46,994 nt of DNA from Thecamonas trahens ATCC 50062 (GCF_000142905.1 NW_013657668.1:1-46994), one strand, 5' to 3'; counted from the first letter of the stretch, positions 820-16,683 are shown. The notes: generated by a model not told the origin, from the sequence alone. Program-made: numbers and translations.

Positions 820-2484
820 ATGCCCTCGTCTCCATCGACGTCCATCTCAACCCAATCCATCCCGCCCTCCTCGCCCTTGCCGCCCAAGTACCTGCCTCCG
901 TCATCTCACACATCCCCTGCCCCAACCCTGCGCGTGGTCATCTCTCATCCCACACTGCAGACAGTACAAATATCACCATCATCCGCCACCATCCACTCTC
1001 ACTTGCACAGCCTCGTCGCGAATGCCATTCCGCCAACTTTCGCGCCATTTCTGTGCCAGCCCGCCACCCACCCTTCTCTTCCTCAACGCCCCACCAGCAG
1101 ACGCACACACACCTTCCGGGGCCACATACCCCTTCCTTCTGTTATCATGTCTTATGTTAATTACTACTACTACATGCATGGCATCACGCCGCCGTCCCCG
1201 TCACCGCCGCCCTCGCCGCCTCTCTCGCTGCTCTCGTCGCCGCCGGCCGCACCGAGTGCCCTGCATGCATCGCTTGGTGTCATCTACGACGACCGCATGC
1301 TTGCCCACGCGCCCAAGTACACCGGCCATCCCGAGCGGCCTGAGCGCTTGACCGCTGTTATGGACCGCCTCCGCGCCGACGCGCTCCTCGACTCGGCTCG
1401 CGTCATGGCCGGCGTCGAAGCCGATGAGGACGACCTTGCGCTCGTCCACTCTCGCGAGCACATTGCCCAGGTCCAGGGTCTCAGCGCACTGCCGCAGCGC
1501 GAGGCCCGGCTCCTCATGCGCAAGCTTGACTCTATTTATTTTAACGAGCTCTCGCCGCTGGCAGCCTCGGTCGCCGCCGGCTCGACTGTCGCCATCACCC
1601 ACGCCGTACTGGCTGGCGAGCTTGATGCTGGCGTTGCCGTCGTTCGTCCGCCTGGCCACCACGCCGAGCCAAGCGAGACCAAGGGCTTTTGTTTCTACAA
1701 CAACGTTGCTGTCGCTGCTGCTGCGGCGCTCAAGTCTGGCGCAGCCTCCCGTGTCCTCATTCTCGACTGGGACGTTCACCATGGCAACGGGACCCAACGC
1801 ATGTTTGAGTACTCTCCCGACGTGCTTTACATCTCGCTTCACCGTTTTGACCACGGCCGCTTCTATCCGGGCACTCGCTACGGAGGACCGACCTCGATTG
1901 GCTTTGGTGCCGGTAAGGGCTACTCGGTCAACATCGGCTGGAATCATCGCGACTTCCGGCCTCGCCCCAAGGCCTTTGTCTTCGACATGAGCCCAGACGC
2001 TCCCGACGCGCCTGCCGAGCCCGACGAACCCGAGACTCCGGCCCACAATACCGCTCCGGGCGATGCGGAGTACATGGCGGCCTTCAGCTCGCTCGTCATG
2101 CCCATTGCCACCGAGTTTGATCCCGATCTCGTCCTCATCTCCGCCGGCTTTGATGCTGCTGTTGGTGATCCGCTCGGCGAGTGCGAGGTCACACCACAAG
2201 GGTATGCGTTTATGGTTCATGCACTCTCATCGCTGCCGTCGGCCAAGGTTGTCATCGCCCTCGAGGGCGGCTACAACCTGGAAGCCATCTCTGTCTCGAT
2301 GTCAGCGTCCGTGTCTGCACTTGTCGACGCTGCTGCGCCCGACGGGCCCGATACCTCGGCCAGCGGGCCGTCCGGCTCGTCGCCACCTCTCCTTGCGCCG
2401 CATCCATCTGCCCTCCGCTCCATCGCCACTGTAGCTGCTGTCCTTGCGCCACACTGGAAGTGCTTGCCGGATCCGTCGTCGTAG
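820..2484 (+). CDS. Class II histone deacetylase (HDA1/HDAC6/HDAC10-like, single catalytic domain)
   Basis: Motifs HPERPERL, RPPGHHA, GFCFYNN, DWDVHHGNGTQ, SAGFDAAVGDPLG, LEGGYN. Start uncertain (ATG 820 or 1147). Confidence 0.93.
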   Translation: MPSSPSTSISTQSIPPSSPLPPKYLPPSSHTSPAPTLRVVISHPTLQTVQISPSSATIHSHLHSLVANAIPPTFAPFLCQPATHPSLPQRPTSRRTHTFRGHIPLPSVIMSYVNYYYYMHGITPPSPSPPPSPPLSLLSSPPAAPSALHASLGVIYDDRMLAHAPKYTGHPERPERLTAVMDRLRADALLDSARVMAGVEADEDDLALVHSREHIAQVQGLSALPQREARLLMRKLDSIYFNELSPLAASVAAGSTVAITHAVLAGELDAGVAVVRPPGHHAEPSETKGFCFYNNVAVAAAAALKSGAASRVLILDWDVHHGNGTQRMFEYSPDVLYISLHRFDHGRFYPGTRYGGPTSIGFGAGKGYSVNIGWNHRDFRPRPKAFVFDMSPDAPDAPAEPDEPETPAHNTAPGDAEYMAAFSSLVMPIATEFDPDLVLISAGFDAAVGDPLGECEVTPQGYAFMVHALSSLPSAKVVIALEGGYNLEAISVSMSASVSALVDAAAPDGPDTSASGPSGSSPPLLAPHPSALRSIATVAAVLAPHWKCLPDPSS

Positions 2485-2497
2485 CTGTAGCCGCTGC

Positions 2498-3889
2498 TCA
2501 CGCCTCGATCAACTTGTTATACTGCTCAAGCGCGTACACCACGGCGTCGAGCGTGTCGCAGAGGTGGACAACGGTCTCGGCCACCTTGCCGGGCCCGGTC
2601 GTCATCATCAGCATCTCAAATGCGGCTGCAGCCTCGTTCGCAAACACCTGCGCCCGCACCGAGTACACCGGAAGGTCAAACTCGAGGAACTCGGCCGGCT
2701 CCGCCAGCTCGTTGTTGATGTTGTTGATGAGCTCGCCGAGCGTCCGCATGGCGAACATGTCCAGCTCCTCCTTCGACTTGCGGCACGCCTTGGCCACACG
2801 CCGGCCGGCATACACCGCAGCTTCGGCAGACTCGACAAGCGCCACAAGGATCTCCTTGCGCTTGCGGAGATCCTCGAGGTCGCCGCGCGTCACTTCCTCG
2901 TCAAACTCGTCCTCGTCCTCGGTCGACGACGACGACGATTCACCCGCGTCCTCACGCGCCTGCTTCTGCACAGACGACAGGATCGCGTCGGCAATCGCAC
3001 CAGCGAGCGCCGACTGGCGCTTCGGCGACCGCAGGTCACCAGCGTCGTCCGACCCACGCCGCCGCTTGCGCGTCCGCCGCCCGGAAGCCGCAGCCGCAAC
3101 ATCCTCGGCCTCGCGCGCCGCCGCGTGCTCAAGCAGCAGCCCCTCAATCTCCTCCGAGTCGACATCCGACCCGACCTCAATCTCGATCACGCCCGACTCC
3201 GACTCCGAGTCGGTCTCATCATCGTCTGTCGACTCGCCCTCCACAGCCACAAGGTTGCCGGCCGCCACCTGCTCCTCCAGGAACGCGTTGAGCTCGTCCT
3301 CGTCCACATCCGACCCGATCTCGATGGTCACAAGCTCCTGCTCGCCGTCATCCGACTCATCGTCCGACTCGGACGACTCGCCCTCCATCGCAATGAGGTT
3401 GCCGGTCGCAGCCTGCTGCTCGAGGAACTCGCGGAGGTCGTCCTCGTCGACGTCCGACCCGATCTCAATCTCCACAATCTCGCCGTCGTGCTCGTGGTCG
3501 TCCGAGTCCGAGCTTGACTCATCCTCGTCCGACTCGGAATCAATGCGCTCGACAGCCACCACGTTGCCGACCGCCGCCTGCTGCTCGATGTAGTCACGCA
3601 CGTCGTCAGAGTCAACGTCCGAGCCGAGGTCAATCTCCACAACCTCGTCGTCCTCATCCGAGTCCGACGCGCTGCCCGAGCCCGACACCGGCTCCACATC
3701 AATAATGTCCTCCTCGTTCAGCTCCTCAGAGCCGCCCGCCTCAGAGTCGGCGTCCGACGCCACCGCGTACAGCACAGGCTCGTCCGAGTCGAGCACCACA
3801 AGCCGTTCCGAGACCGATGACGTCGACGAGTCCGACGACGAGCCCGACTGCGGGACAATCACAACATGCGAAGAACGGTGGGGAGACAT
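2498..3889 (-). CDS. Hypothetical acidic protein with four internal repeats of about 45-50 aa and a helical C-terminal domain
   Basis: Long ORF with coding-like codon bias; ATG at 3889 (MSPHRSS); repeats of the form (V/I)EI(E/D)xGSDVDxDx(L/V)xx(F/Y)(L/I)EQQAAxGN(L/V)VAVE. Confidence 0.75.
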   Translation of the reverse strand: MSPHRSSHVVIVPQSGSSSDSSTSSVSERLVVLDSDEPVLYAVASDADSEAGGSEELNEEDIIDVEPVSGSGSASDSDEDDEVVEIDLGSDVDSDDVRDYIEQQAAVGNVVAVERIDSESDEDESSSDSDDHEHDGEIVEIEIGSDVDEDDLREFLEQQAATGNLIAMEGESSESDDESDDGEQELVTIEIGSDVDEDELNAFLEEQVAAGNLVAVEGESTDDDETDSESESGVIEIEVGSDVDSEEIEGLLLEHAAAREAEDVAAAASGRRTRKRRRGSDDAGDLRSPKRQSALAGAIADAILSSVQKQAREDAGESSSSSTEDEDEFDEEVTRGDLEDLRKRKEILVALVESAEAAVYAGRRVAKACRKSKEELDMFAMRTLGELINNINNELAEPAEFLEFDLPVYSVRAQVFANEAAAAFEMLMMTTGPGKVAETVVHLCDTLDAVVYALEQYNKLIEA

Positions 3890-4141
3890 GGTTGAAGGGT
3901 AACTAGCTACGACTTGCTTGACAAACAGCGTGGGAAAGTTGGGTGTCGGCTGGTCTGCTGTCGTGGCCAACAGTGCACAGGGGGGGGGGAGGAGCCGAGC
4001 TGCGGATGGATGGATGAGGATGGATGGATGCAATGCGACTCGGTCGCCCAAGCCAAACTTTCACTTTCGCCCAACTGACGGGACGATGACGACGTTGGCT
4101 GGTTGGTGGCCCGGCCCGAGTCCGCTGTCGCTGCCGAGCAG

Positions 4142-6760
4142 CTAGTCTCCCGACGGCCGCGACGACGGCAGCGGCGGCGGCGGTGGCATGACAATCGGCG
4201 GCAAATGGCTCGGCGGCCCGCCGCTCCCGCTGCCAGGCCCATGGCCGCCTACGTGCTGGCTCGGCAGCACGTGGCTCGACGGCGGATGCATGCTGCCAGA
4301 CATCAGGCGCGAGGAGAACGGCATCACCTGCGAGGACATGGCCTCGGACGGCGGCGCCGGGACCGGTCCGGATCCCTTCTCGCTCTTGCGCTTGCTCCGC
4401 ATCGGCCGCAGGAACGGGTCCGAGACGAGCGTAAGCACGTCGGGCCGCGCATGCTGCGAGTACTCGAGGCAGCGCTTGATGAACGCCTTGGCCTCCTCAG
4501 AGACCTGCGGCTTGGACGGGAAGACAACCTGCCGCGCGTTGATGATCACATTGTCCTTCAGCAGGTTCTTCTGCGAGAGGTCGTTGCCAAACGGCTTGCG
4601 CCCATACAGCATCTGGAAGAGGAGGACGCCCACCGACCACACGTCGACCTTGGACGAGATTGTCGGTGGGGACGGTCCCACCACAAAGCACTCGGGTGGG
4701 AGGTACCAGTACGTCCCGGCGCCCTGCGAGGTCAGCTCCATGTTCGACGCCTCAGACTCCATGATCTTGGAAAGGCCAAAGTCGGTCACCTTGGCCATGC
4801 CAAACTTGTCAAACAGAATGTTCGCAGGCTTGAGGTCGTAGTGGATGACCGGCCGCTCCAGCCGGTTAATGTACGTGAGAGCAGACATGATCTGCGCCGT
4901 AATCGACCTCGCCGCCCGCTCCGGCAGCTTCTTCCGCTGCTTGAGCACTTCGTCGAGGTCCGAGCCCTCGCAGTACTCGAGGACCGTGCAGAACGAGTTG
5001 CGGTCGATCTCAAAGACGTCAAAGAGCGAGACAATGTTGGGGTGGCCCAGGTTGTGGTGGATCTGGTACTCGCGGATGGCGTGCCGCGTGTAGTTGGACT
5101 TTTTCTCATCCGACCAGTGGCCCGAGAGCTGGTGAATCTTGCATGCCACGTACCGCAGCTCCTCGAGGTCAAACGCTTTGTACACTTCCGAGAACCCGCC
5201 CTTGCCGAGCAAGTTGAGCAGCATGTACCGCGAGTTGAGAATCTGCTGCTGGTTGAACGGCGAGTTGTCCTCGTCGTGCGCTCGCCGCAGATCGCGGATG
5301 AGCACGTGCTTTTCGGCCTCGAGCCGCTCGCGTGCGTGGAACAGCTCTCCCTCCTCCTTCTTGGCCTTTTGCAGCTCGAGCCGGAGCACCTCCTCGTAGT
5401 GCACCACAGACTCGGAGCTCACCAGCGTCCCCGCCGGGAACGCATCCGACGACGTCTCGTCCTGCACAAGCACCTGCGTCCCGCCACCGATCCCCCCAAG
5501 CGCCATCGGCTTCAGCTCCACCACCGGCGGCGACTTGACTCCGCCGGGCACAGACGATGCCCCGGTCGAGAGCTTGCTCTTGTGCTTGAGCTTCGACAGC
5601 TTCTTGCGTTCCTTCTCCAGCGCCTCCTTGCGCGCACCGAGCCGAGCAAGCTTCATCTGCAGCTCCAAAAACTCGAGCCCGTCCTGCCACACCTCCACCA
5701 CCTGGTGCCCGTGCCGCTCGCGCGTGATGTATCCCAGCCGCGCCTGCGCCTGCTTCAGCCGCCGCCGCTCCTCAAACATCGCCGTCCGCGTCTGCTCCAC
5801 AAGCATGTCGATCAGCAGCGACGTCATTCGCGACGTCCGCGACTTGTACCGCGACTCAAACTCGTTTCGCTGCTGCACAACGTGCGAGAGCTGCATTTCA
5901 AGCTCGGAAATCCGGGCGCTCGCTGCCGCTGCCGCGGCGCTCGCCGCCGCAGTCTCGGCCTCGGTCGGCTCGCGCGAGCCCGAAACAGACGTCGACCGCA
6001 GCCGCTGCCGCTTCGACATCCGCTCGTCCTCCTCGGGCGGGACAGAGCCCGACGACGACGGCGAGCCGCCGCGCCCATTCGACCGCGACCGCTTGCGCGA
6101 GCCCGCTCCCTTGGACCCTGAACTCCGTCCGGGTGACGACGGCGACGCCTCGTTCGGCTGCGCCGCCGCCTGCGCTTTCTCGATCCGAGAAAATCTCTGC
6201 CGAATCTGCTTTGCAGACCGGTTGAGCTGCTTCTCGCTGACAATCCGCTCCCAGTCCTTGCCGAAATCGCGGACGCCAGCCACAATCGCCCAGTCCTCCT
6301 CTTTGGAAAACCGCTTGCCGCGCGACTTGATCGCGCTTGCGCTTGCGCTCGTGTTCGACCCGCTCAGCAGCAGCGGGTGCGTCATCGGGTTCGCCGCAGA
6401 CGGGTGCGTCACACGCGGCCCGCCGGGCTTCTCGGGCTCGCCAAACGATGCCCCGCCTGGCCCGGCCACAGGATACCGCAGCTGCTGCAGCGCAAGCGGA
6501 ACAGCCCCGCCGCCGGGCAAAGACGGTGGCCGCACCCCGCCGCTGGCCCGCACCGGCGACGACGACGCCGCAGCCGCTTCCGCTGCAGACACCGACTCGG
6601 CCGACGCCACACGCGGCACAAGGTCCATCATGCCCGACGAAATGGGCTTGCCCTGCATCCGCGCCTCAAGTAGACTCCGACGGTGGTCCGTTAGCCCGTG
6701 CGAGCTGCTCGCCACAGGCCCTCTGCTCAGCCCACGCGTGTCCGACGACTGCTGAGCCAT
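4142..6760 (-). CDS. TLK: Tousled-like Ser/Thr kinase with an N-terminal Myb/SANT-like domain
   Basis: TLK-diagnostic kinase motifs LGKGGFSEVYKAFDL, YVACKIHQL, HYDLKPANIL, TDFGLSKIM, ELTSQGAGTYWYLPPECF, ISSKVDVWSVG; upstream coiled coil with EVWQDG. Confidence 0.95.
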   Translation of the reverse strand: MAQQSSDTRGLSRGPVASSSHGLTDHRRSLLEARMQGKPISSGMMDLVPRVASAESVSAAEAAAASSSPVRASGGVRPPSLPGGGAVPLALQQLRYPVAGPGGASFGEPEKPGGPRVTHPSAANPMTHPLLLSGSNTSASASAIKSRGKRFSKEEDWAIVAGVRDFGKDWERIVSEKQLNRSAKQIRQRFSRIEKAQAAAQPNEASPSSPGRSSGSKGAGSRKRSRSNGRGGSPSSSGSVPPEEDERMSKRQRLRSTSVSGSREPTEAETAAASAAAAAASARISELEMQLSHVVQQRNEFESRYKSRTSRMTSLLIDMLVEQTRTAMFEERRRLKQAQARLGYITRERHGHQVVEVWQDGLEFLELQMKLARLGARKEALEKERKKLSKLKHKSKLSTGASSVPGGVKSPPVVELKPMALGGIGGGTQVLVQDETSSDAFPAGTLVSSESVVHYEEVLRLELQKAKKEEGELFHARERLEAEKHVLIRDLRRAHDEDNSPFNQQQILNSRYMLLNLLGKGGFSEVYKAFDLEELRYVACKIHQLSGHWSDEKKSNYTRHAIREYQIHHNLGHPNIVSLFDVFEIDRNSFCTVLEYCEGSDLDEVLKQRKKLPERAARSITAQIMSALTYINRLERPVIHYDLKPANILFDKFGMAKVTDFGLSKIMESEASNMELTSQGAGTYWYLPPECFVVGPSPPTISSKVDVWSVGVLLFQMLYGRKPFGNDLSQKNLLKDNVIINARQVVFPSKPQVSEEAKAFIKRCLEYSQHARPDVLTLVSDPFLRPMRSKRKSEKGSGPVPAPPSEAMSSQVMPFSSRLMSGSMHPPSSHVLPSQHVGGHGPGSGSGGPPSHLPPIVMPPPPPLPSSRPSGD

Positions 6761-9013: not shown

Positions 9014-11651
9014 ATGCGTAGCATACTACTCTTACTTCTACTGGGCCTCTGTGCAACCGCAGTTTCCGGGGCGAGCATGCTACGGGGCATCCCGGTTGTG
9101 TACGTCGCCGTCGTCCACGTGCGCTGACAGCAACACGCAATGGAAGCTGTGATCGATAGTACACTCACGCACCTCGCCCCATCCCTTTCTCCACGCCACT
9201 CCCACACGCAGCGCAACGTCGTATGCTACAGAGACCCCGCAGCCGCTCGGGCGGTGCTCTGACAACAGTCACTGCGACATCGGATCCGTCTGCTCGCCGC
9301 ACGGCTCGTGTACGCCGCGCGACGCCTGGCCGGCCGATACAGACCCTGTTGGCATCCGATGGACGCTCTACGCCGCAGTAGCGGCTGTTGCACTTGTGTT
9401 CTCGTACTTTTCGTTCACTCCGCGCGTGCCGATGTTGCGATCCCCGGCCAACCTCTTTGCTGCGATGGCCTGCGCTCTAGCAGCCGTTTTTGTCGTCTCG
9501 ATCCTTCTCGACCCGACTCCCAGCGTCCATGTCGCGCCTCTCTCCCCCGAGCTCCTGGGCAACGCCACATGCGTCGAACGCTACGATCCAAGCTGTGCTC
9601 CGTTTGTTTGTGAGACCCGGGCTGGCCACTGTCTCGCCAGCTGCTCCTCGCATGTCGACTGCACCGATGTTGGACTCGCCTGCGTCGGCGGCGAGTGCGT
9701 CGCTGCAACCTCGCTCACCTCTCAGGCGGTCTACACCTGGCGAGTGATCCTGACGCGCGTGGTTGGTATGTTGGCCCTTGTTGGGCCGTGGGTTTTTGTT
9801 GACATCTTTGTCGCTCGCCCATACCTGTACAGCGTCGACTTTATCGCCGTCCCGGTCTACGCCTTCTTCGCCTGCCTCTGGCTCCTTGCTACCGCCTACA
9901 CCGCTTCGTCTGTCGGCTACGTGCACACGCCGCCGCAGTACGAAAAGTATTCAACCCGCTACTTTATGTGGTCGCCTTCGGTGCCGTTGGACCTGGGCGA
10001 AGATGCGTTTGCCTACTTCGCCTCGTATGGCCTCATCGCCCGCGCCGTCGCCACGCTTCTGCCATCGGCAGCTATGGTACTCGCAACATCCTGCACGACT
10101 CGGCTTGTTGGTGCCCGCGCTTACCGTCTGCGTGCTCTTCCGCTCACTATCGCTGTCGTTCTCTCCATTGCTAGCGCCGCACTTGGCATTCCGCCGCCAA
10201 CTGTGTTTGTGCTCGTCGCGCTCGTTAGCAGCTACATGCAGCATGCCTGGGATGACTCGTCGATCCGGCTTCCGGCAGCCTTTTTTGCGCTCGCCGTCTT
10301 TAGCTACCCAGGCGCGGTCATGCTCGACTTCATGACCACCATGCCATCTGAAGTCACGCTTGGCTTTGCGCTGCTGCTGGCCCTGGTGGCGGGTCTGCGG
10401 TTCCGACCCAACAATCGCTCAGTCCGGGCGTGGCACTGGCACCGTGCCGCTATCCTGGCCGTCACCGTATCCATCGCCGTTGTCATGTGCATCACCTATG
10501 CCCCCTCCAAACCGCCGACGGATGGCCTTCCATGCTCGCCGCAGGCCATGTCACACTGCTACCCGCTGCGGTGCGAGTATGCGGCCGGTGCATGCATCAG
10601 CTCGTGCGCCGGGAGTGACGAAAACTGCATCGCCGGCTTTGTCTGCTCCGACGTCAGCGGCCGGCCGACCTGCGTCCCTCTCGTTGATGCCGAAAACCCA
10701 GAAGCCGAGCACTCCAAATCGTGGCTCTATCCGTTCTCGATGGTCCTCGTCCTGCTCGCCAATCTTTGTGCGGCAGCGGGCTCGATCTGCTTCGTTTTTG
10801 TCGCTGGCCCACGGCTCTCCGTTCGCGCCCTCGTCGCTGTTTCTGTCGTTGCGCTTGGTCTTGCTCTTCTCTTCTCGCTGTTTGGCATCAACATGCTCGC
10901 GCTGCCGACCTCGTTCATCTTTGCTCTGTTCTATGACTCGATACTCACCGCGACAACAATGGCAGTCACGCTTGCGTCGTCGCTCGCCACTGCGGCGACA
11001 ACTTGGCTGTCGGAGCCTGACGCGGTCGTCGTGGCCACACCCAGTGCTGCGACATCCAACGCAACAAGCGTCGAATGCGCCGCCACCTTTGCCGTCGCCT
11101 GCTTTCCGTTCACCTGCGACGTGACTGCGGCCGCGTGCAAGAGCGTCTGCGCCTCCGATGCCGAGTGCTTCCTCTCGACTTTGTGCATCGACGGTGTGTG
11201 CCAGGCGAGCGCCACCGCCGAGCTTGCAGTCTCGGGCTGGACAGTTGCGGTGCTTGTTGCCGCATGCCTTGCGTTTATCGCTGTCTCGGCCCTGCTCCGT
11301 GCGTGGGACTCGGTCGGCTACGGCACGGTTGCGCTGGGTATGATCATCGGCATGCGCGTTGCCATCCGAAAGCTGCCGGGTGTCTCGGTCGTCGACAAGA
11401 TGGGCGACGTGACGACTAGCAGCGACTACGCCACCATCTACGAGGTCGCCCAGGCTCCGCTCGCGTTCTTCCGCTCACCTCGGGCTCTGATTCCGTCGCT
11501 AATGCTTATCTTCTCGCACAAGCTGGCGATTACGGTCGTCACCACGTACCTGGCCTTGGGTGCACTGCGCGGCAGCCGGTACTTTCCCGAGGCGCCTTGT
11601 GGTTGGCCGCGTACCTGTTCCCGAAGCTCCGCTGGGGGACTGCTGCTTTGA
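9014..11651 (+). CDS. N-terminal part of a multipass membrane protein with extracellular 8-Cys modules; probably one gene with the RBR ORF downstream
   Basis: Signal-peptide-like MRSILLLLLLGLCATAVSG at 9014 (5' exon structure unresolved); frame open from about 9210; many hydrophobic segments alternate with C-x7-CxP(F/L)xC-x6-CxxxC-x5/6-C-x5/6-C-x4/8-C modules. Confidence 0.7.
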
Positions 11652-13707
11652 TTGCATGGCGTACGCTCGCGGTATACCGTGCCGACGTGCCCGGTGGCCT
11701 CAACCCGCGGCGCTCGCTGTCGCGTGCCCACCGCATCCGCCGGGTGGCGTTGCTGCTGCTCGGACTTGGTGCTGCGCTGGCGCCCGAGCTTCACCGGCCT
11801 CGTCCGGAGTGAGCGATCCTGTACGTGCGCCGTCAGGCGTGAGGGCGACTGCCTTTGCCGGCCACTCGCTGCAGCCGCTGCCGTTGCTGGAGGGAGCTGG
11901 CGTGAATTCTTCGAGTGCCGAATGCAGCGCCGAGCTTGACGTCCGCTGTGGGCCTGCCTACAAGTGCGATGTCGTGGGAGGAAAGTGCCTTTCGTCATGC
12001 TCTGTGCACGCGCACTGTTGGCCGATGCACGCGTGCGTCGACGGCGACTGTGTCCCACTGGGTGGTCCTGAGCCGAGGCCGTGGCTCGTCGGCACGCTCA
12101 CCATCACCGCGCTGTCATTGTGCGGCGTTGCCGCGGCCCTGTTTGTCACGCTCCGCGTAGGAGCCCGAGCCAGGGGTGTGATCCTGGGTGTGAGCGTGTT
12201 CGTGGCGACAATCATTGTGGTCGCCGCCGGGCTTGACGTCCTGGGCACATCGCCTGATCCGCTCTCTTCACGAGCGGTGGCAAGCTCGGCAGCGAAGGAT
12301 GCGCCCGTGTGCTCTATGGTGCTTGACTCAGTCTGTGCGCCTTTCCGGTGCCACACCGGGCGTGGCCGTTGTGCCAGGGCATGCGCCGCCAGCAGCGACT
12401 GTGGACCGGGCTTTATCTGCGACAAGGCAAGCAGGGCGTGTGTGGACAATGACTTGCGCCACGGCTGGCGGTGGGTATTCTACCTCGGAGCGACCGGCGT
12501 GTTCTGGTGGGTAGTCCTGGCCGTGATTCCGTGGCTGCGGCGAACAAGGCAGTGGTGGCACGAGCGCGAAGCGCGCCGCAGGCTTGAAGCCATCGAGGCT
12601 GAGCGCGAGGCCATCAAGGCCGAGATCGCGGCCAAGAAGCGTGCGCACAAGCACCGCCTTGACATTGACGTGCCTGTGGTCGATCCGACCGCCCCGCGAT
12701 ACGATCCATCCAAGCCGACGCCGCTGTACCCGTCGCCGCGGACAGCGGCAGCAGTGCGCGCGTTCTTCTCCGGCGACGACCACGGCGCCGACAGTGCCGG
12801 CTTGTCAGCCGCCGCCGACCTGGTTGACGACCCGAACGCGGTCTTTCGGCACACCGACTCGGCATGCTGCGTCTGCTTTTCCGACACGGTGGCGGTGCGG
12901 ATGCTGGGGCGCGCGTGCCGGCACGGGTTCTGCGACGAGTGCGCTGAGCAGGCGCTCAACACCATTGTGGAGAGTGGCCAGTTCCCGGCAGCGTGCCCGG
13001 GCTGCCTGGCTGATGGCGGCATGGCAGCGCCTGTCGAGACAGCCTTCATCCCTGCCCACGTCATCGAGGCGCTGGTTGCCCGTGGCGTGCTCTCCATTCC
13101 GTTTGGCCGCAAATTTGTGAGTCAGCAGGTCATGCACGCCTTTGACCGCTCGCAGTTTGTCTGCTGCCCGATCTGCGACCTCATGTGCTTCAAGCCGAGC
13201 TGGGACGACAAGGTTGTCGAGACCATGGTTGAGCCGTGGCGAGTCGAGTGCCCGGCATGTGAGTCCGCCTTTTGCATCAAGTGTAACGAGTACTACCGGG
13301 GGCACGCCGGGCTCACTTGTGAGGACTTTGAGTCCAAGACCCAGCGGGCGGCCGAGGCTGCGTCGATGGGCCTCATCCTCCAAACCGCCAAGGCTTGCCC
13401 ACGGTGCGGAACCGGCGTCACGCACTGGGCCGGTCACGGTTGCCACCACATCTCCGGCTGCTGCGGCTACGATTGGTGCTTTGTCTGTCTCGAGCCTCAC
13501 CCGTGCTCGCGCGTCGGCCACGCCCTTTTTTGCGACGACGGCTGCGGCTGCGTCCCGTGTCCGATCTGCCGCCCAGGCTCGCCGTGCGACAAGTGCCCTG
13601 GCGGCGATCGCTGCCCAAGCTGCTCCGGCGTCGCACCCTCCACGGCTCTCAATCCGGTCGATGCCCCAGACGATGCGGGCATGATAGACCTTGTGGACGT
13701 GATATAG
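11560..13707 (+). CDS. C-terminal part: two more 8-Cys modules, TM helices, coiled coil, RBR (RING1-IBR-RING2) E3 ubiquitin ligase and Cys-rich tail
   Basis: RING1 CCVC...CRHGFCDEC...CPGC; IBR CPIC...CPACESAFCIKC..HAGLTC; RING2 KACPRC...GCHHISGCCGYDWCFVC with the catalytic Cys position present. Coding-like sequence starts at about 11800. Confidence 0.85.
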   Translation: MHCAAAGTFPRRLVVGRVPVPEAPLGDCCFDCMAYARGIPCRRARWPQPAALAVACPPHPPGGVAAARTWCCAGARASPASSGVSDPVRAPSGVRATAFAGHSLQPLPLLEGAGVNSSSAECSAELDVRCGPAYKCDVVGGKCLSSCSVHAHCWPMHACVDGDCVPLGGPEPRPWLVGTLTITALSLCGVAAALFVTLRVGARARGVILGVSVFVATIIVVAAGLDVLGTSPDPLSSRAVASSAAKDAPVCSMVLDSVCAPFRCHTGRGRCARACAASSDCGPGFICDKASRACVDNDLRHGWRWVFYLGATGVFWWVVLAVIPWLRRTRQWWHEREARRRLEAIEAEREAIKAEIAAKKRAHKHRLDIDVPVVDPTAPRYDPSKPTPLYPSPRTAAAVRAFFSGDDHGADSAGLSAAADLVDDPNAVFRHTDSACCVCFSDTVAVRMLGRACRHGFCDECAEQALNTIVESGQFPAACPGCLADGGMAAPVETAFIPAHVIEALVARGVLSIPFGRKFVSQQVMHAFDRSQFVCCPICDLMCFKPSWDDKVVETMVEPWRVECPACESAFCIKCNEYYRGHAGLTCEDFESKTQRAAEAASMGLILQTAKACPRCGTGVTHWAGHGCHHISGCCGYDWCFVCLEPHPCSRVGHALFCDDGCGCVPCPICRPGSPCDKCPGGDRCPSCSGVAPSTALNPVDAPDDAGMIDLVDVI

Positions 13708-13908: not shown

Positions 13909-14658
13909 ATGTCGTTTCTCGCCACCACACTCGGCACGTTTGCGGTGCACGAGGCCGGGTGGCTGGCAAGCAACCTGCCGTACCTTGTGGCCGCCGATCG
14001 TGGATGGTGGGAGGCATACAAGGTGGTGCGAGTGGGCAAGGCGCGCGAGCCTGGATCGGACGAGCGATGGGCGCTGTTCTGGACCATTCTGGGCGATCAC
14101 TTTAAGATGATGCTGCCACTGCTGGCACTCGCGTACTACCCGCTACTGGCGCACCTCTTCACCGCTGATGCCATGCCGTCGTGGCTCGAGGCGCTCGCGG
14201 CGTTTGTACTCTTCAACGTTGTCGAGGACACGCTCTTCTACTGGGTTCATTATGCGCTCCACGTGCCGCGACTGTACAAGGCCATCCATCGCAAGCATCA
14301 CGAGCACGTGGTCACGTTTTCGCTCACCGGCGAGGTCTCGCACCCGCTCGAGTTCCTCGCCAACATCCTTGTTCCGCTCATGGCCGGCCCTGTCCTTCTT
14401 GTCCTTGCCTACCGCAAGGTCCACCTTGTCGAGTTCTGGGTCTGGATCGTATTCCGCACTATGCGCGGCGCCGACGCCCACTCGGGCTACCAGCTCCCGT
14501 TCCATCCGCTCCGCCTTCTCTCACCCATCTACGGTGGGCCCGCCTACCACGACCACCACCACTCCATCCGCGGCCGCCAGACCAACTTTGGCGGATACCG
14601 GTTCTGGGACTGGCTGTGCGGTACATACTCGCCCGGGCCTGCCGCCAAGGCCGCTTAG
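13909..14658 (+). CDS. Fatty acid hydroxylase/sterol desaturase superfamily enzyme, C-4 methylsterol oxidase (ERG25/SMO)-like
   Basis: His boxes HYALH, HRKHHEH, HDHHH; EDTLFYWVH, HPLE, DAHSGY, WDWLCGT. Confidence 0.9.
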   Translation: MSFLATTLGTFAVHEAGWLASNLPYLVAADRGWWEAYKVVRVGKAREPGSDERWALFWTILGDHFKMMLPLLALAYYPLLAHLFTADAMPSWLEALAAFVLFNVVEDTLFYWVHYALHVPRLYKAIHRKHHEHVVTFSLTGEVSHPLEFLANILVPLMAGPVLLVLAYRKVHLVEFWVWIVFRTMRGADAHSGYQLPFHPLRLLSPIYGGPAYHDHHHSIRGRQTNFGGYRFWDWLCGTYSPGPAAKAA

Positions 14659-14877: not shown

Positions 14878-16683
14878 ATGGACGAGGCCGGCCCGTCGAC
14901 TCGAGACGGGCTTCGACTCACGGTACATGATCTCCCTCCCGAGCTCATGCTTCACATTTTCTCGTTTGTTGACACTGCCACGCTTGTCCGCCTCCGGCGC
15001 GTCTGCTCGACCTGGCGCTCTCTCGCAGAGGACAATGCTCTCTGGCGCAAGCTGGTGACCGGCACGTTTGAGCGATGCGGGCACCAGATCAATGGCAACT
15101 CCGATCTGCGGCCTGCTGCAGAACTGCACCTGGCATCAGTTGTCTCGCGCCACTTCCAAGCTGTCATGGCTGCCAATCCCGACCTGGCTGCCCGCCGTCC
15201 CGACTTGGATCGCCCGCTCCCGCCTTTGCTGGCTGCTCCCGCCGAGCGAGCGCGATCCTCCGTGGCTCGTCATCACGAGAGCGAGGAGAGCAGCGCAAGC
15301 CGGAGCAGTAGTGATGCCAATAGTTGGGTTGATGTCGCCGGCCTAGTCATGACCTCTCGCCAAGTGCGGTCGTTGTCCGACAGGGAGGCGCCGCGCGGCC
15401 CCCACCCGCCGATTACTTCGACCGAACACAATCCGCAGCAGTTCTTCATCAACCACACGCTTCCGGAGGAAGCGATGGGTGACTTGTTGGCACCGGTAGC
15501 AATGGTGTCTCAGGCGCAAACGCAGGATCGTCCGTTGCTGAGTGCCGAGATTGTGGCGCAGTTTGTGCCGACGCCTGGGCTCAACTCGGTCTACCGCGCG
15601 GTCGACGCGATGGCGATCAAGTCTGAAGACGCGCTTGTTGCGTGGCGGACGAAGCTTCGCGAGGAGCGGTTTGGCGAGTTGTTTGCCCTTGTGTTTTCTG
15701 TCATCATGCTTGCGTCGTCGGTCTTTGAGTGTGTGGCGATCGTGCTCCTTGCCGACGGCATCGTCGACTGGTCCTGGCGGGTTCTCGTTCCGATTGCCGT
15801 CTTCTATGCCCTCCTTCTTCTCACGATTCCATTTGATGTTGGATCGAAGAGTCCAGGCGGGGCGTGCTTTATGGCGTGGATGGTAGTCTGGACGCTGCTT
15901 GCGGTTGTCACCTTCTGCTGCCGTGGCGACAATGTGGTGGTCGGTGAGTGGACGCCACACAGCGTGTACCTTCCGCTCAATGCCGCGCTTCTCCCAATTG
16001 AGTTGTATTGGGGCATGATTTCAGGCGCGATGCTTGTCGAGGCGTTTCGTTCGCGCCTGCGCGGGCTCGCAATCCGTGTGTACTACGTCTTTACCGGCGG
16101 CGCCATGCTCATCCCACTCTCCTTCCTCATCCAGTGGCAGATCGAGTTTCCGGGCAGCAAGGTGACCTCGTGGTGGCACGCTCTGACGCCGTTGATTGTG
16201 GCGGTGTGGATGTTTGCGCCGACATCGACCTTTGTGCTCTTACTCGACGCCGCTGTGCTTCAGCTCCCAATTGCGACCGACGGTGTCCTGTCCTTTGTCG
16301 GCTGCATGGGAGCCATGTCGATCTACGGCGGCATCTTTGTCACGGTCGCCACCAACTCGCTACACAATAATCAGACGCTGGCGTGGGCCTTCTTTCCGGT
16401 CTTTTTCATCCAACTCTACTCGCTGGTGGCCATCGGTCTCATGAGCTTTGAGTCGCGCGCCTTCTACGGCTGCTGCCCGCGGCCGTGCATCCCGCTCTGG
16501 CGGACGTCACACCTGGGTGACGGCTCGTGCTGTCAGCCGCCGGTGACTCCACCCGCCTCGATTCTACCACGATCCGCAGCCTGGGCCGCCGTCGCCACCT
16601 CCCTTGATCGGCTCGCAGTTGCCAACCGCCCTGCATCTGCCCGCTACGCGTCCGACTCCGCGTCGCTGAGCGATGTCGTGTGA
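14878..16683 (+). CDS. F-box protein with C-terminal multipass membrane domain (TMEM185/FAM11-like repeats)
   Basis: F-box LPPELMLHIFSFVDTATLVRLRRVCSTWRSLAEDNALWR; about 8-9 hydrophobic helices with W.W....P motifs (DWSWRVLVP, WTPHSVYLP, SWWHALTP, WAFFP). Confidence 0.85.
   Translation: MDEAGPSTRDGLRLTVHDLPPELMLHIFSFVDTATLVRLRRVCSTWRSLAEDNALWRKLVTGTFERCGHQINGNSDLRPAAELHLASVVSRHFQAVMAANPDLAARRPDLDRPLPPLLAAPAERARSSVARHHESEESSASRSSSDANSWVDVAGLVMTSRQVRSLSDREAPRGPHPPITSTEHNPQQFFINHTLPEEAMGDLLAPVAMVSQAQTQDRPLLSAEIVAQFVPTPGLNSVYRAVDAMAIKSEDALVAWRTKLREERFGELFALVFSVIMLASSVFECVAIVLLADGIVDWSWRVLVPIAVFYALLLLTIPFDVGSKSPGGACFMAWMVVWTLLAVVTFCCRGDNVVVGEWTPHSVYLPLNAALLPIELYWGMISGAMLVEAFRSRLRGLAIRVYYVFTGGAMLIPLSFLIQWQIEFPGSKVTSWWHALTPLIVAVWMFAPTSTFVLLLDAAVLQLPIATDGVLSFVGCMGAMSIYGGIFVTVATNSLHNNQTLAWAFFPVFFIQLYSLVAIGLMSFESRAFYGCCPRPCIPLWRTSHLGDGSCCQPPVTPPASILPRSAAWAAVATSLDRLAVANRPASARYASDSASLSDVV

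What the first reader, a model, noticed from the sequence alone, without database searches (positions are those of the whole stretch)
9014..13707. Receptor-like E3 ligase: multipass membrane protein with repeated extracellular 8-Cys modules and a cytoplasmic RBR domain
Seen: signal peptide, one partial and five complete 8-Cys modules (about 9255, 9570, 10532, 11076, 11923, 12310; consensus C-x7-CxP(F/Y)xC-x6-CxxSC-x5-C-x5-C-x4-C). Each module sits in a loop between blocks of TM helices (roughly 20 in total). These are followed by a coiled coil, a complete RING1-IBR-RING2 with GCHHI and a further Cys-rich tail. The same module occurs in both ORFs, which argues for one gene of about 1500 aa. Established: membrane-bound RBRs (RNF144, RNF19, RNF217) have only 1-2 TM anchors and no ectodomain, and ligand-sensing membrane E3s (RNF43/ZNRF3) use simple RINGs. 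The module reminds me of myxobacterial Cys-rich surface repeats (recollection, unverified). Inference: an undescribed sensor coupling extracellular or lumenal binding to ubiquitination.
Basis: partly seen in the sequence, partly recalled or inferred. Interest (0 to 1): 0.8.

Follow-up and report, generated by a model that had tools for sequence, protein, structure and literature searches.

The report
Multipass membrane RBR ubiquitin ligase family
A gene of the marine flagellate Thecamonas trahens encodes a ubiquitin ligase of the RBR type anchored by many membrane helices, with five small disulfide-rich modules in the outward loops; this design is shared by four sister genes and two relatives from public environmental sequence data (one a Tara Oceans contig), is undescribed in the papers searched, and is split in two by the public annotation.

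Summary
Window 9014-13707 (+) carries a signal peptide, a half module, five complete 8-Cys modules at the stated coordinates, about 17-19 hydrophobic helices, a coiled coil, and a complete RING1-IBR-RING2 with the catalytic Cys in GCHHI and a Cys-rich tail.

The genome is Thecamonas trahens, which has introns. The first frame change is a GT-AG intron (9100-9211), which an existing gene model also uses. The second (about 11579-11874) is probably an intron, but its borders are unresolved and no transcript evidence was found.

Four paralogs in the genome and two relatives from environmental data (a Tara Oceans contig and a Logan run) have the same layout in single open frames. That layout is signal peptide, half module, [TM-TM-module] x5, one TM, coiled coil, RBR, Cys tail, and a UBA-like end (P0007 breaks off before the tail). 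The one-gene reading is therefore well supported. Public models instead split the locus into 841 aa and 383 aa proteins and omit modules 4 and 5.

The module folds confidently (pLDDT 94) but matches no Pfam or NCBIfam model and no PDB fold. It also sits next to the membrane in two surface proteins, which argues that it faces outward.

Ligand-controlled ubiquitination remains untested. A disordered linker of about 70 aa favours a tethered ligase. First readers of this scan flagged the four paralogs on other DNA of the same genome.

The parts
9014..9099 (+). Exon 1: start codon and signal peptide (MRSILLLLLLGLCATAVSG...), frame 2
   Evidence: Existing gene model P0142 starts here and uses the same splice.
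9100..9211 (+). Intron 1, 112 nt, GTACGT...pyrimidine tract...CAG; joins frame 2 to frame 0 through a split Val codon
   Evidence: P0142 residue 30 onward maps to 9213 at 100% identity.
9212..11578 (+). Exon 2 (frame 0; open to 11648; 3' border not fixed): half module, modules 1-3 and about 14-16 TM helices
   Evidence: codon-usage score positive in frame 0 up to about 11595.
9255..9311 (+). N-terminal half module CSDNSHCDIGSVCSPHGSC (matches the C-terminal half of the 8-Cys module)
   Evidence: The module HMM hits the equivalent position in paralogs and in P0142 (E 7.6e-4 to 2.5e-3).
9348..9509 (+). TM hairpin 1 (two helices)
   Evidence: Hydropathy.
9570..9698 (+). 8-Cys module 1
   Evidence: E 3.0e-12. 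AF2 model of this module has pLDDT 94.
9759..10502 (+). Expanded TM block, 7 or 8 helices (canonical paralogs have 2 here)
   Evidence: the count is not resolved.
10533..10673 (+). 8-Cys module 2
   Evidence: E 3.7e-10.
10743..10973 (+). TM block, 3 or 4 helices
11076..11201 (+). 8-Cys module 3
   Evidence: E 1.9e-11.
11241..11565 (+). Two TM helices (11241-11297 and 11484-11565) with a loop of about 60 aa
11579..11874 (+). Probable intron 2 (frame 0 to frame 1). Borders are unresolved and several GT-AG pairs fit. An assembly indel inside 11503-11648 is the alternative
   Evidence: Frame 0 stop at 11649 and frame 1 open from 11503. No frame scores as clearly coding from about 11600 to 11850. 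Candidate splice pairs are listed.
11875..13707 (+). Exon 3 (frame 1): modules 4-5, three TM helices, coiled coil, linker, RBR, Cys tail, stop
11923..12051 (+). 8-Cys module 4
   Evidence: E 3.7e-12.
12097..12234 (+). TM hairpin (two helices)
   Evidence: AF2 helices 69-94 and 100-123.
12310..12441 (+). 8-Cys module 5
   Evidence: E 6.3e-12.
12472..12645 (+). Last TM helix, continuing without a break into a charged coiled-coil helix
   Evidence: AF2 H193-257; sequence.
12646..12864 (+). Linker modelled at low confidence, with two short invariant motifs (LDxxVP, PTP)
   Evidence: Block pLDDT mostly 46-60; invariant D263, P267 and P281.
12865..13005 (+). RING1 (C3HC4)
   Evidence: Invariant Cys and His. 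The profile aligns to ARIH1 residues 180-382 across the RBR.
13165..13320 (+). IBR
   Evidence: Pfam IBR E 4.8e-4, which is below the gathering score; profile and fold matches.
13396..13488 (+). RING2 (Rcat) with CPRC...GHGCHHI; the catalytic Cys codon is 13441-13443
   Evidence: C508, P509, C511 and C523 are invariant in 65 sequences. Aligned to CNHM of ARIH2.
13489..13623 (+). Cys-rich tail (HPC...LFCDDxCxCxxCPxCRPGxPCxxCPGxxxCPSC), shared with a wider protist RBR clade

Best explanation
The locus is one gene of Thecamonas trahens. It encodes a member of a small, so far apusomonad-type family of multipass membrane RBR ubiquitin ligases. A cleavable signal peptide puts the N-terminus outside the cytosol. 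Pairs of TM helices then alternate with small 8-Cys (four-disulfide) modules, so that the half module and all five full modules face the exterior or the lumen. A final TM helix continues as a coiled coil into the cytosol. After a flexible linker comes a catalytically complete RING1-IBR-RING2. Inferred mechanism: RING1 binds an E2~ubiquitin, ubiquitin is passed to the RING2 cysteine (codon 13441-13443), and it is then transferred to lysines of proteins near the same membrane. The TM and module array provides localisation and partner or substrate recognition. In this reading the enzyme is a membrane-tethered ligase rather than a rigidly coupled sensor. Shown here: the sequence features, the family, the conserved architecture, the RBR fold and the confident module fold. 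Inferred: topology, catalytic activity, substrates and any regulation by the modules. The window copy is the divergent paralog, with extra TM helices between modules 1-2 and 2-3 and no UBA-like end.
For: The organism was named and by earlier scan notes. Five paralogs are present in the genome. C19, C46 and C50 are single open frames of more than 1,636 aa, 1,341 aa and 1,449 aa, with the layout SP - half module - [TM TM module] x5 - TM - RBR. The same layout occurs in P0006 (1,333 aa, one ORF on a Tara Oceans contig) and in P0007 (1,172 aa, Logan run SRR30952584). P0006 is 39% identical to C46 and P0007 is 37% identical to C19 over their full length. The seven module-bearing proteins form a clade with 98/96 support, and C46+P0006 pair at 99/98, so the duplications predate the species split. 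The window holds exactly the family's number of modules: 3 in the first frame and 2 in the second. Intron 1 is canonical and is used by model P0142. For RBR membership, the profile hits ARIH2 and ARIH1 at E 2e-10 and 1e-9 across RING1 to RING2. Foldseek matches HOIP, RNF216, ARIH2, Parkin and HOIL-1 at probability 1.00. The catalytic Cys is invariant in 65 sequences. For topology, module loops carry 0.97 N-x-S/T sequons per 100 aa against 0.30 in hairpin loops, and hairpin loops are richer in K+R (11.7 against 8.4 per 100). The module also lies just before the single TM of two type I proteins that carry DUF4215 repeats. Modules and RBR are the best conserved parts between orthologous pairs (49% and 56% against about 30% for TM helices and loops).
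Against: There is no transcript evidence for the exon 2-exon 3 junction, and no protein in the searched collection covers 11875-12528. The borders of intron 2 are ambiguous. The TM count between modules 1-2 and 2-3 in the window copy could not be fixed as even, so its topology rests on analogy with the paralogs. The window copy lacks the UBA-like domain that the four Thecamonas paralogs and P0006 carry. This assembly has at least one single-base frame error in a paralog, so sequence errors or real decay cannot be excluded. No functional data exist for any family member.
Confidence: 0.7

Rival explanations
1. Ligand-gated receptor-ligase. Binding of an external or lumenal ligand to the Cys modules changes the packing or dimerisation of the TM bundle, and this releases RBR autoinhibition.
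For: The architecture is receptor-like, with six exposed modules. The last TM runs as one continuous helix into a coiled coil, as in many signalling receptors. Modules are conserved between orthologous pairs. RBR ligases are typically autoinhibited (general knowledge; ARIH1 and Parkin structures are among the hits).
Against: The linker of about 70 aa between coiled coil and RING1 is modelled at low confidence (pLDDT mostly 46-60), is variable in length and is poorly conserved, which fits poorly with mechanical coupling. Outside the Cys scaffold the modules are only 32-38% identical between orthologs, barely above the loop background. No ligand, partner or autoinhibitory element was identified.
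Confidence: 0.25
2. Two separate genes, as in the public annotation: an 841-aa membrane protein (P0142) and a 383-aa soluble RBR ligase (P0005).
For: Existing models P0142 and P0005 map at 100% identity to 9014-11648 and 12583-13704. Frame 0 has a stop at 11649. No spliced transcript was found.
Against: This model leaves modules 4 and 5 and three TM helices (11875-12528) uncoded, although all their Cys are intact and the frame is open for 610 codons. The first 9 residues of P0005 come from another frame, and its modelled intron removes the last TM. Every intact relative joins five modules to the RBR in one ORF. The public model of the C21 paralog has a similar artificial intron that deletes a TM helix.
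Confidence: 0.08
3. A decaying paralog (pseudogene). The second frame change would be a real frameshift, and the copy would already have lost its UBA-like end.
For: The frame change lacks a uniquely convincing splice pair. The UBA_4 domain is absent. The membrane part is atypical, with extra helices. No ortholog of this particular paralog was found among the 150 best hits.
Against: There are two long open frames of 812 and 610 codons with no internal stops. All 40 module Cys, all zinc ligands and the catalytic Cys are kept. Codon usage and GC3 are coding-like on both sides and non-coding-like only across about 250-300 nt between them, as expected of an intron.
Confidence: 0.1
4. An ER or Golgi quality-control ligase (ERAD-like). 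The modules would face the lumen, and the multipass domain would recognise misfolded or unassembled membrane proteins, like Hrd1, Doa10 or TRC8 but with RBR chemistry.
For: Most known multipass E3 ligases are ER-resident (PMC4021871, and general knowledge). Topology predictions cannot distinguish lumen from cell exterior. The paralogs' UBA-like domain is of the type found in UBX and p97-adaptor proteins (Pfam UBA_4).
Against: The same module is used next to the membrane in two proteins that look like cell-surface proteins with large repeat ectodomains. No ER-retention motif or ERAD-family TM domain was detected, and Pfam found nothing in the membrane part.
Confidence: 0.15

Closest known systems
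Ariadne-type and other RBR E3 ligases (ARIH1/HHARI, ARIH2, HOIP, RNF216, Parkin)
   Same: Both have RING1-IBR-RING2 with a C3HC4 RING1, an IBR, and a RING2 carrying the Cys-x-His catalytic pair. The profile hits ARIH2 and ARIH1, and the fold matches at probability 1.00. Four paralogs and P0006 end in a UBA-like domain; ARIH1 also carries a UBA-like domain, though at a different position (general knowledge).
   Different: Those enzymes are soluble. This family has a signal peptide, 11-19 TM helices and repeated ectodomain modules N-terminal to the RBR. Its RING2 motif (H)YRGHxCHHI and its long Cys-rich tail after RING2 are distinctive.
Animal membrane-associated RBRs: RNF144A/B, RNF19A/B (Dorfin), RNF217
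   Same: Both combine an RBR ligase with hydrophobic membrane segments (PMC4021871).
   Different: From general knowledge, the animal proteins have one or two hydrophobic segments C-terminal to the RBR and no ectodomain. PMC4021871 states only that they have hydrophobic regions whose insertion had not been determined. Here the membrane part is N-terminal, multipass and interleaved with disulfide modules. No specific sequence affinity to them was seen, and this was not tested directly.
PA-TM-RING receptor-like ligases (RNF43, ZNRF3, RNF13, GRAIL)
   Same: The concept is shared: an ectodomain, a membrane span and a cytosolic ubiquitin ligase domain.
   Different: Those proteins have a single TM, a PA ectodomain and a simple RING-H2 that acts without a thioester intermediate (PMC4021871 and general knowledge). 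None of these features is present here.
Multipass RING ligases of the ER (Hrd1, Doa10/MARCH6, TRC8, RNF145)
   Same: Both have many TM helices joined to a cytosolic ligase domain.
   Different: Those are RING or RING-CH ligases, not RBRs. They have no repeated disulfide modules in their lumenal loops. Pfam shows no similarity in the membrane part.
Uncharacterised protist RBRs with the same RING2 and Cys tail (e.g. Paulinella P0012 and P0016, the dinoflagellate Biecheleria P0094, metagenomic P0034, P0063, P0083, P0119)
   Same: They share the RBR subtype (E 1e-26 to 1e-54 to the family profile), and several have 2-7 N-terminal TM helices.
   Different: None carries the 8-Cys module (module HMM). 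They fall outside the 98/96-supported module-bearing clade.
Myxobacterial-type Cys-rich acidic repeat (TIGR02232 myxo_disulf_rpt / Pfam DUF4215)
   Same: Both are small Cys-rich extracellular units. The DUF4215 repeat and the 8-Cys module occur together in two other Thecamonas surface proteins.
   Different: The sequence pattern is different (CGDG...EECDDGN). The module gives no hit to either model.

Membership tests
RBR (RING-between-RING) E3 ligases | RING1 with a C3HC4 zinc-ligand pattern | tested here: met
   C331, C334, C348, H350, C353, C356, C374 and C377 of exon 3 are invariant in the 5 paralogs and nearly invariant in 65 sequences. They align to RING1 of ARIH1 and ARIH2.
RBR (RING-between-RING) E3 ligases | IBR domain between the two RINGs | tested here: met
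   For the window protein, Pfam IBR scores E 4.8e-4 and 20.6 bits, below the gathering score of 24.3. P0006 scores 33.8 bits, above it. The family profile aligns through the IBR of ARIH1, ARIH2 and HOIP, and the fold matches whole RBR structures.
RBR (RING-between-RING) E3 ligases | RING2 (Rcat) with a catalytic Cys followed by His two residues later | tested here: met
   The sequence is CPRC-x10-GHGC(523)HH(525)I. C523 is invariant in 65 sequences and aligns to the Cys of GCNHM in ARIH2.
RBR (RING-between-RING) E3 ligases | Forms an E3~ubiquitin thioester and transfers ubiquitin | not testable with these tools
   This needs a biochemical assay.
Animal membrane RBRs (RNF144, RNF19, RNF217) | One or two TM segments C-terminal to the RBR and no ectodomain | tested here: not met
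   All TM segments lie N-terminal to the RBR. Nothing hydrophobic follows RING2.
PA-TM-RING ligases (RNF43, ZNRF3) | PA ectodomain, a single TM and a RING-H2 | tested here: not met
   No PA domain hit in Pfam. The protein is multipass and carries an RBR, not a RING-H2.
myxo_disulf_rpt (TIGR02232) / DUF4215 (PF13948) | Match of the 8-Cys module to the family model | tested here: not met
   No hit at E <= 1 for the window proteins or for single modules. The same models hit the two other Thecamonas proteins strongly (E 2e-80 and 7.7e-22).
Knottin / Dickkopf / Draxin-type small disulfide folds | Significant structural match of the module model | tested here: inconclusive
   The best Foldseek hit has E 2.3 (squash trypsin inhibitor). 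Draxin and Dkk4 score E 3-6. The best VIA-align hit is Draxin at Z 2.5. For a 49-residue domain, a weak match does not exclude kinship.
UBA-like domain (Pfam UBA_4) at the C-terminus, as in the paralogs | UBA_4 match after the Cys tail | tested here: not met
   The window ORF ends 27 residues after the tail, and no UBA-like frame lies downstream before the next gene. The four paralogs and P0006 have the domain.
The module-bearing RBR family itself (Thecamonas C19, C46, C50, C21; P0006; P0007) | Signal peptide, half module, five 8-Cys modules separated by even numbers of TM helices, a final TM, and an RBR with Cys tail | tested here: met
   All elements are present in the window in the same order. 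The window lies inside the 98/96 clade. The evenness of the TM counts in two blocks is unresolved.

The most novel reading that the evidence does not exclude
A new class of cell-surface receptor in which ligand binding to a row of small disulfide modules, threaded through the membrane by TM hairpins, directly switches on an RBR ubiquitin ligase in the cytosol. This would be a one-polypeptide route from an outside signal to ubiquitination, in a lineage close to the root of animals and fungi.
Probability: 0.2. Interest if true: 0.85.

Novelty: new variant of a known kind. Interest (0 to 1): 0.58.

Why it matters
RBR ligases are known as soluble enzymes or as enzymes anchored by one or two C-terminal helices. 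This family joins RBR chemistry to a large, regularly built multipass domain whose outward loops are each a folded disulfide module. Neither this building plan (module, TM hairpin, module) nor the module itself matched anything in the libraries and papers searched. If the modules bind something, the family would be a direct link between the cell exterior, or the lumen, and ubiquitination. Even as a plain tethered ligase, it enlarges the known design space of E3 ligases in a protist group that branches near the opisthokonts. A practical consequence is that the public gene models for at least three of the five Thecamonas genes are wrong: the window locus is split in two, and modules or TM helices are spliced out of the C46 and C21 models. 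Domain-architecture surveys based on those models would therefore have missed the family.

Tried and rejected
**Organism.** I first guessed a trypanosomatid, from GC content and CA repeats. One search named Thecamonas trahens, so I dropped that guess.

**Word-based protein searches.** Three searches were run. One search found only two paralog models. Searches were blank, and one search missed even known paralogs. These blanks therefore say little.

**Exact look-up of a neighbouring gene.** This was meant to retrieve the public gene calls around the locus.

**JGI metagenome scan with the family profile.** It returned two distant RBR loci without modules.

**ESM Atlas.** It was busy for new sequences. 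For P0142 the Atlas's own model is poor (pLDDT 0.38), and all structural neighbours have TM-score below 0.3. Most are Cys-rich proteins of Myxococcota, and the matches are not meaningful.

**Fold searches with the module model.** Neither Foldseek nor VIA-align gave a significant match.

**A frame-2 micro-exon or double frameshift across 11590-11810.** I considered this because that frame contains two hydrophobic stretches. Codon-usage scoring gave no frame clear coding potential there, so I kept it only as a minor possibility.

The exons were searched and folded by reference, one at a time.

Full report
**What is in the window**

The window has about 62% G+C. One search identified the genome as Thecamonas trahens ATCC 50062, because paralogous proteins carry the names AMSG_09394 and AMSG_04998. 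Earlier notes of this scan say the same. T. trahens is an apusomonad flagellate with spliceosomal introns, and this matters for reading the locus.

The finding spans three reading frames:
- Frame 2 holds an ATG at 9014 followed by MRSILLLLLLGLCATAVSG... and stops at 9125.
- Frame 0 is open from 9153 to 11648.
- Frame 1 is open from 11503 to 13704, with TAG at 13705-13707.

- a half module at 9255-9311;
- complete 8-Cys modules at 9570, 10533, 11076, 11923 and 12310;
- a charged helical stretch;
- RING1, IBR and RING2 with GCHHI;
- a Cys-rich tail.

**How the frames join**

The first junction is a textbook intron. GTACGT begins at 9100, a pyrimidine tract follows, and CAG ends at 9211. The intron is 112 nt long and joins frame 2 to frame 0 through a split Val codon. 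An existing gene model, P0142 (841 aa), uses exactly this splice.

The second junction is less clear. G+C at third codon positions and a codon-usage log-odds score, trained on the paralogs, show frame 0 coding up to about 11595. Frame 1 is coding from about 11850. No frame looks clearly coding in between. Many GT-AG pairs would join the frames without a stop, for example GT at 11579 with AG ending at 11813, 11843 or 11915, and I cannot choose among them.

A single-base assembly error in the overlap 11503-11648 is the alternative. Such an error, or a real frameshift, exists in the C21 paralog. There the frame changes within about 25 nt with no room for an intron, and the public model hides this with an artificial intron that deletes a TM helix.

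I found no transcript evidence. No protein of 120-381 aa in the 5.8-billion-cluster collection covers 11875-12528. Each exon was searched and folded by reference.

**The family**

A six-frame search of the genome with the 3' frame found four paralogs. Three are single uninterrupted frames:
- C19, more than 1,636 aa in the fetched locus (open frame of 1,906 aa in the genome);
- C46, 1,341 aa;
- C50, 1,449 aa.

Hydropathy and pattern mapping give the same plan in all of them. The plan is signal peptide, half module, five repeats of [TM, TM, 8-Cys module], one last TM, a coiled coil, the RBR, the Cys tail and a C-terminal UBA-like domain. Pfam UBA_4 scores E 1.5e-9 to 3.9e-5. C19 has one extra TM pair.

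The exhaustive HMMER search with a profile of the C-terminal halves (alignment A1) found 2,962 proteins at E <= 1e-3. Among the best 150, only these carry the module (module HMM):
- the Thecamonas models;
- P0006, 1,333 aa, with 7 cluster members;
- P0007, 1,172 aa.

P0006 is one ORF on a 6.6-kb Tara Oceans contig. Its neighbouring CstF77-like gene is 60% identical to the Thecamonas one, which indicates a related but distinct organism. One member of its cluster is a fragment held in the 'merc' collection, under a Tara Oceans run accession. P0007 comes from a 3.8-kb Logan contig of run SRR30952584.

P0006 is 39% identical to C46 over its full length, and P0007 is 37% identical to C19. In a maximum-likelihood tree of the RBR region, the seven module-bearing proteins form a clade with 98/96 support. 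C46+P0006 pair at 99/98 and C19+P0007 at 80/94. The paralogs therefore arose before these organisms separated.

The window copy lies inside the clade. It has exactly the family's complement of modules, three in the first long frame and two in the second. This is the strongest argument that the locus is one gene. Public models instead give an 841-aa membrane protein (P0142) and a 383-aa RBR protein (P0005). The first nine residues of P0005 come from another frame, and its modelled intron removes the last TM. Modules 4 and 5 are left unannotated.

**The module**

The 24 modules align with eight invariant Cys and the consensus C-x7-C-x-P-[YF]-x-C-[DN]-x5-C-x3-C-x5-C-x5-C-x3-5-C-V. AlphaFold2, given this alignment, predicts module 1 of the window with mean pLDDT 94.

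The fold matches nothing significantly:
- The best Foldseek E-value is 2.3, to a squash knottin.
- Draxin and Dkk4 score E 3-6.
- The best VIA-align hit is Draxin at Z 2.5.
- No Pfam or NCBIfam model matches.

In the whole genome the module profile finds 25 copies in the five RBR genes. It also finds one copy in each of two other genes. Both are type I membrane proteins with arrays of DUF4215 / myxo_disulf_rpt repeats, and in both the module sits immediately before the single TM. The module is not that repeat, but it keeps company with it. It is also independent support that the module is an exoplasmic, membrane-proximal unit.

**Topology**

With a cleaved signal peptide and 11 TM helices (13 in C19), all modules fall on the exoplasmic side and the RBR on the cytosolic side. 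Module-bearing loops hold 20 N-x-S/T sequons in 2,053 residues, often just before the first Cys, against 2 in 665 residues of hairpin loops. Hairpin loops are richer in Lys+Arg, 11.7 against 8.4 per 100 residues. Eight invariant Cys fit an oxidising compartment, and a zinc-dependent RBR that must meet E2~ubiquitin fits the cytosol.

The window copy departs from the canonical plan. Hydropathy gives 7 or 8 helices between modules 1 and 2 and 3 or 4 between modules 2 and 3. Even numbers are needed for a consistent topology. They are plausible but not shown.

**The ligase part**

The family profile hits ARIH2 and ARIH1 at E 2e-10 and 1e-9. The ARIH1 alignment runs from RING1 to RING2. Parkin, HOIP and RNF216 score more weakly.

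The AF2 model of the window's exon 3 product has mean pLDDT 74, with about 90 over the RBR. It matches HOIP, RNF216, ARIH2, Parkin, HOIL-1 and HHARI structures at Foldseek probability 1.00. In a 65-sequence alignment the CPxC of RING2 and the catalytic Cys of GCHHI are invariant, and the His two residues on is nearly so. The enzyme looks catalytically complete.

The same model shows the last TM continuing as one helix of about 65 residues into a charged coiled coil. This is followed by about 70 residues modelled at low confidence (pLDDT mostly 46-60), variable in length among paralogs. This stretch carries two short invariant motifs, LDxxVP and PTP. That linker is why I favour a tethered ligase over a rigidly coupled sensor.

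The RING2 motif (H)YRGHxCHHI and the tail FCDxxCxCPxCPxCxPGxPC define a wider RBR clade in Paulinella, a dinoflagellate and metagenomes. Several of those proteins have 2-7 N-terminal TM helices but no module. N-terminally multipass RBRs therefore exist beyond this family. No paper describing them turned up in the searches run here.

**Comparison with known systems**

A 2011 review lists RNF19A, RNF19B, RNF144A, RNF144B and RNF217 as the human RBRs with hydrophobic regions (PMC4021871). By general knowledge these regions lie C-terminal to the RBR and there is no ectodomain. The PA-TM-RING and multipass ER ligases use RING or RING-CH domains.

Four full-text searches found no description of an RBR with this architecture, nor of this Thecamonas family. 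The library does not hold most subscription papers, so this is not proof of absence.

I therefore file the protein as an RBR ligase, since all sequence-testable features are met, and as a new architectural variant. It is not a member of any named membrane-RBR subfamily.

**Mechanism, ranked**

- Most likely (about 0.55 within the one-gene reading) is a membrane-tethered RBR that ubiquitinates neighbouring membrane or cortical proteins. The module and TM array would give localisation and recognition.
- A ligand-gated receptor-ligase is possible (about 0.25) but has no direct support.
- An ER quality-control role is possible (about 0.15).
- Between orthologous pairs, the modules (44-49% identity) and the RBR (48-56%) are the most conserved parts. 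Without the Cys, module identity drops to 32-38%, close to that of the loops. The scaffold is constrained more than the surface.

**Status within the scan**

First readers flagged the four paralogs on other pieces of this genome as receptor-like RBR ligases (s1-760974, s1-753680, s1-758368, s1-747552). No follow-up was listed. These are the same idea seen on paralogous DNA, not independent evidence.

**Verdict**

The one-gene, modules-outside and RBR-inside reading is well supported by comparison with the family, but it lacks transcript proof at the second junction. The sensor function is speculative. The architecture is a new variant of a known kind of enzyme, restricted so far to Thecamonas and two related sequences from public environmental data.

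Noticed in passing
G000:C22:291825-291965 (L014 open frame 2875-4494) and G000:C12:246906-247046 (L015 open frame 1198-4866): Two type I membrane proteins have arrays of DUF4215 / myxo_disulf_rpt repeats (4 and 20 Pfam stretches). Each carries one copy of the 8-Cys module immediately before its single TM helix. This is a bacterial-type Cys-rich repeat combined with the apusomonad module.
   Followed up: partly
L012 about 4370-4395 (G000:C21 about 13370-13395): The C21 paralog changes reading frame within about 25 nt (GGCGGCCCGGA) with no room for an intron. This is a single-base indel, either an assembly error or a real frameshift. Public model P0002 bridges it with an intron that removes a strongly hydrophobic TM helix.
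   Followed up: partly
window 9014-11648 and 12583-13704: Existing gene models split the locus into P0142 (841 aa) and P0005 (383 aa). P0005 starts with 9 residues from another frame and skips the last TM. The public model of the C46 paralog (P0001) also splices out parts of modules that lie in a continuous ORF.
   Followed up: yes
proteins P0012, P0016, P0034, P0063, P0083, P0094, P0119 (big search): A wider, unnamed RBR clade has the RING2 motif HYRGHxCHHI and a Cys-rich tail. It occurs in Paulinella, the dinoflagellate Biecheleria and metagenomes. Several members have 2-7 N-terminal TM helices, and some have extra small RING-like fingers before the RBR.
   Followed up: partly
paralogs C19, C46 and C50, cytosolic ends of TM helices: Clusters of Cys sit at the cytosolic membrane border of the hairpin loops (for example CCCFSCFFYKCDPC, CSNKCCSPYS, GCCDRMP). 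They are possible palmitoylation sites.
   Followed up: no
window 12646-12720: Two short motifs in the otherwise variable linker are invariant in all five paralogs: LD(I/V)xVP and PTP. They could be docking or sorting motifs.
   Followed up: no
window 13909-14655 and 14878-16683: The downstream neighbours are a fatty-acid hydroxylase / sterol desaturase-like gene (HxxHH motifs) and an F-box protein fused to a multipass membrane domain.
   Followed up: no
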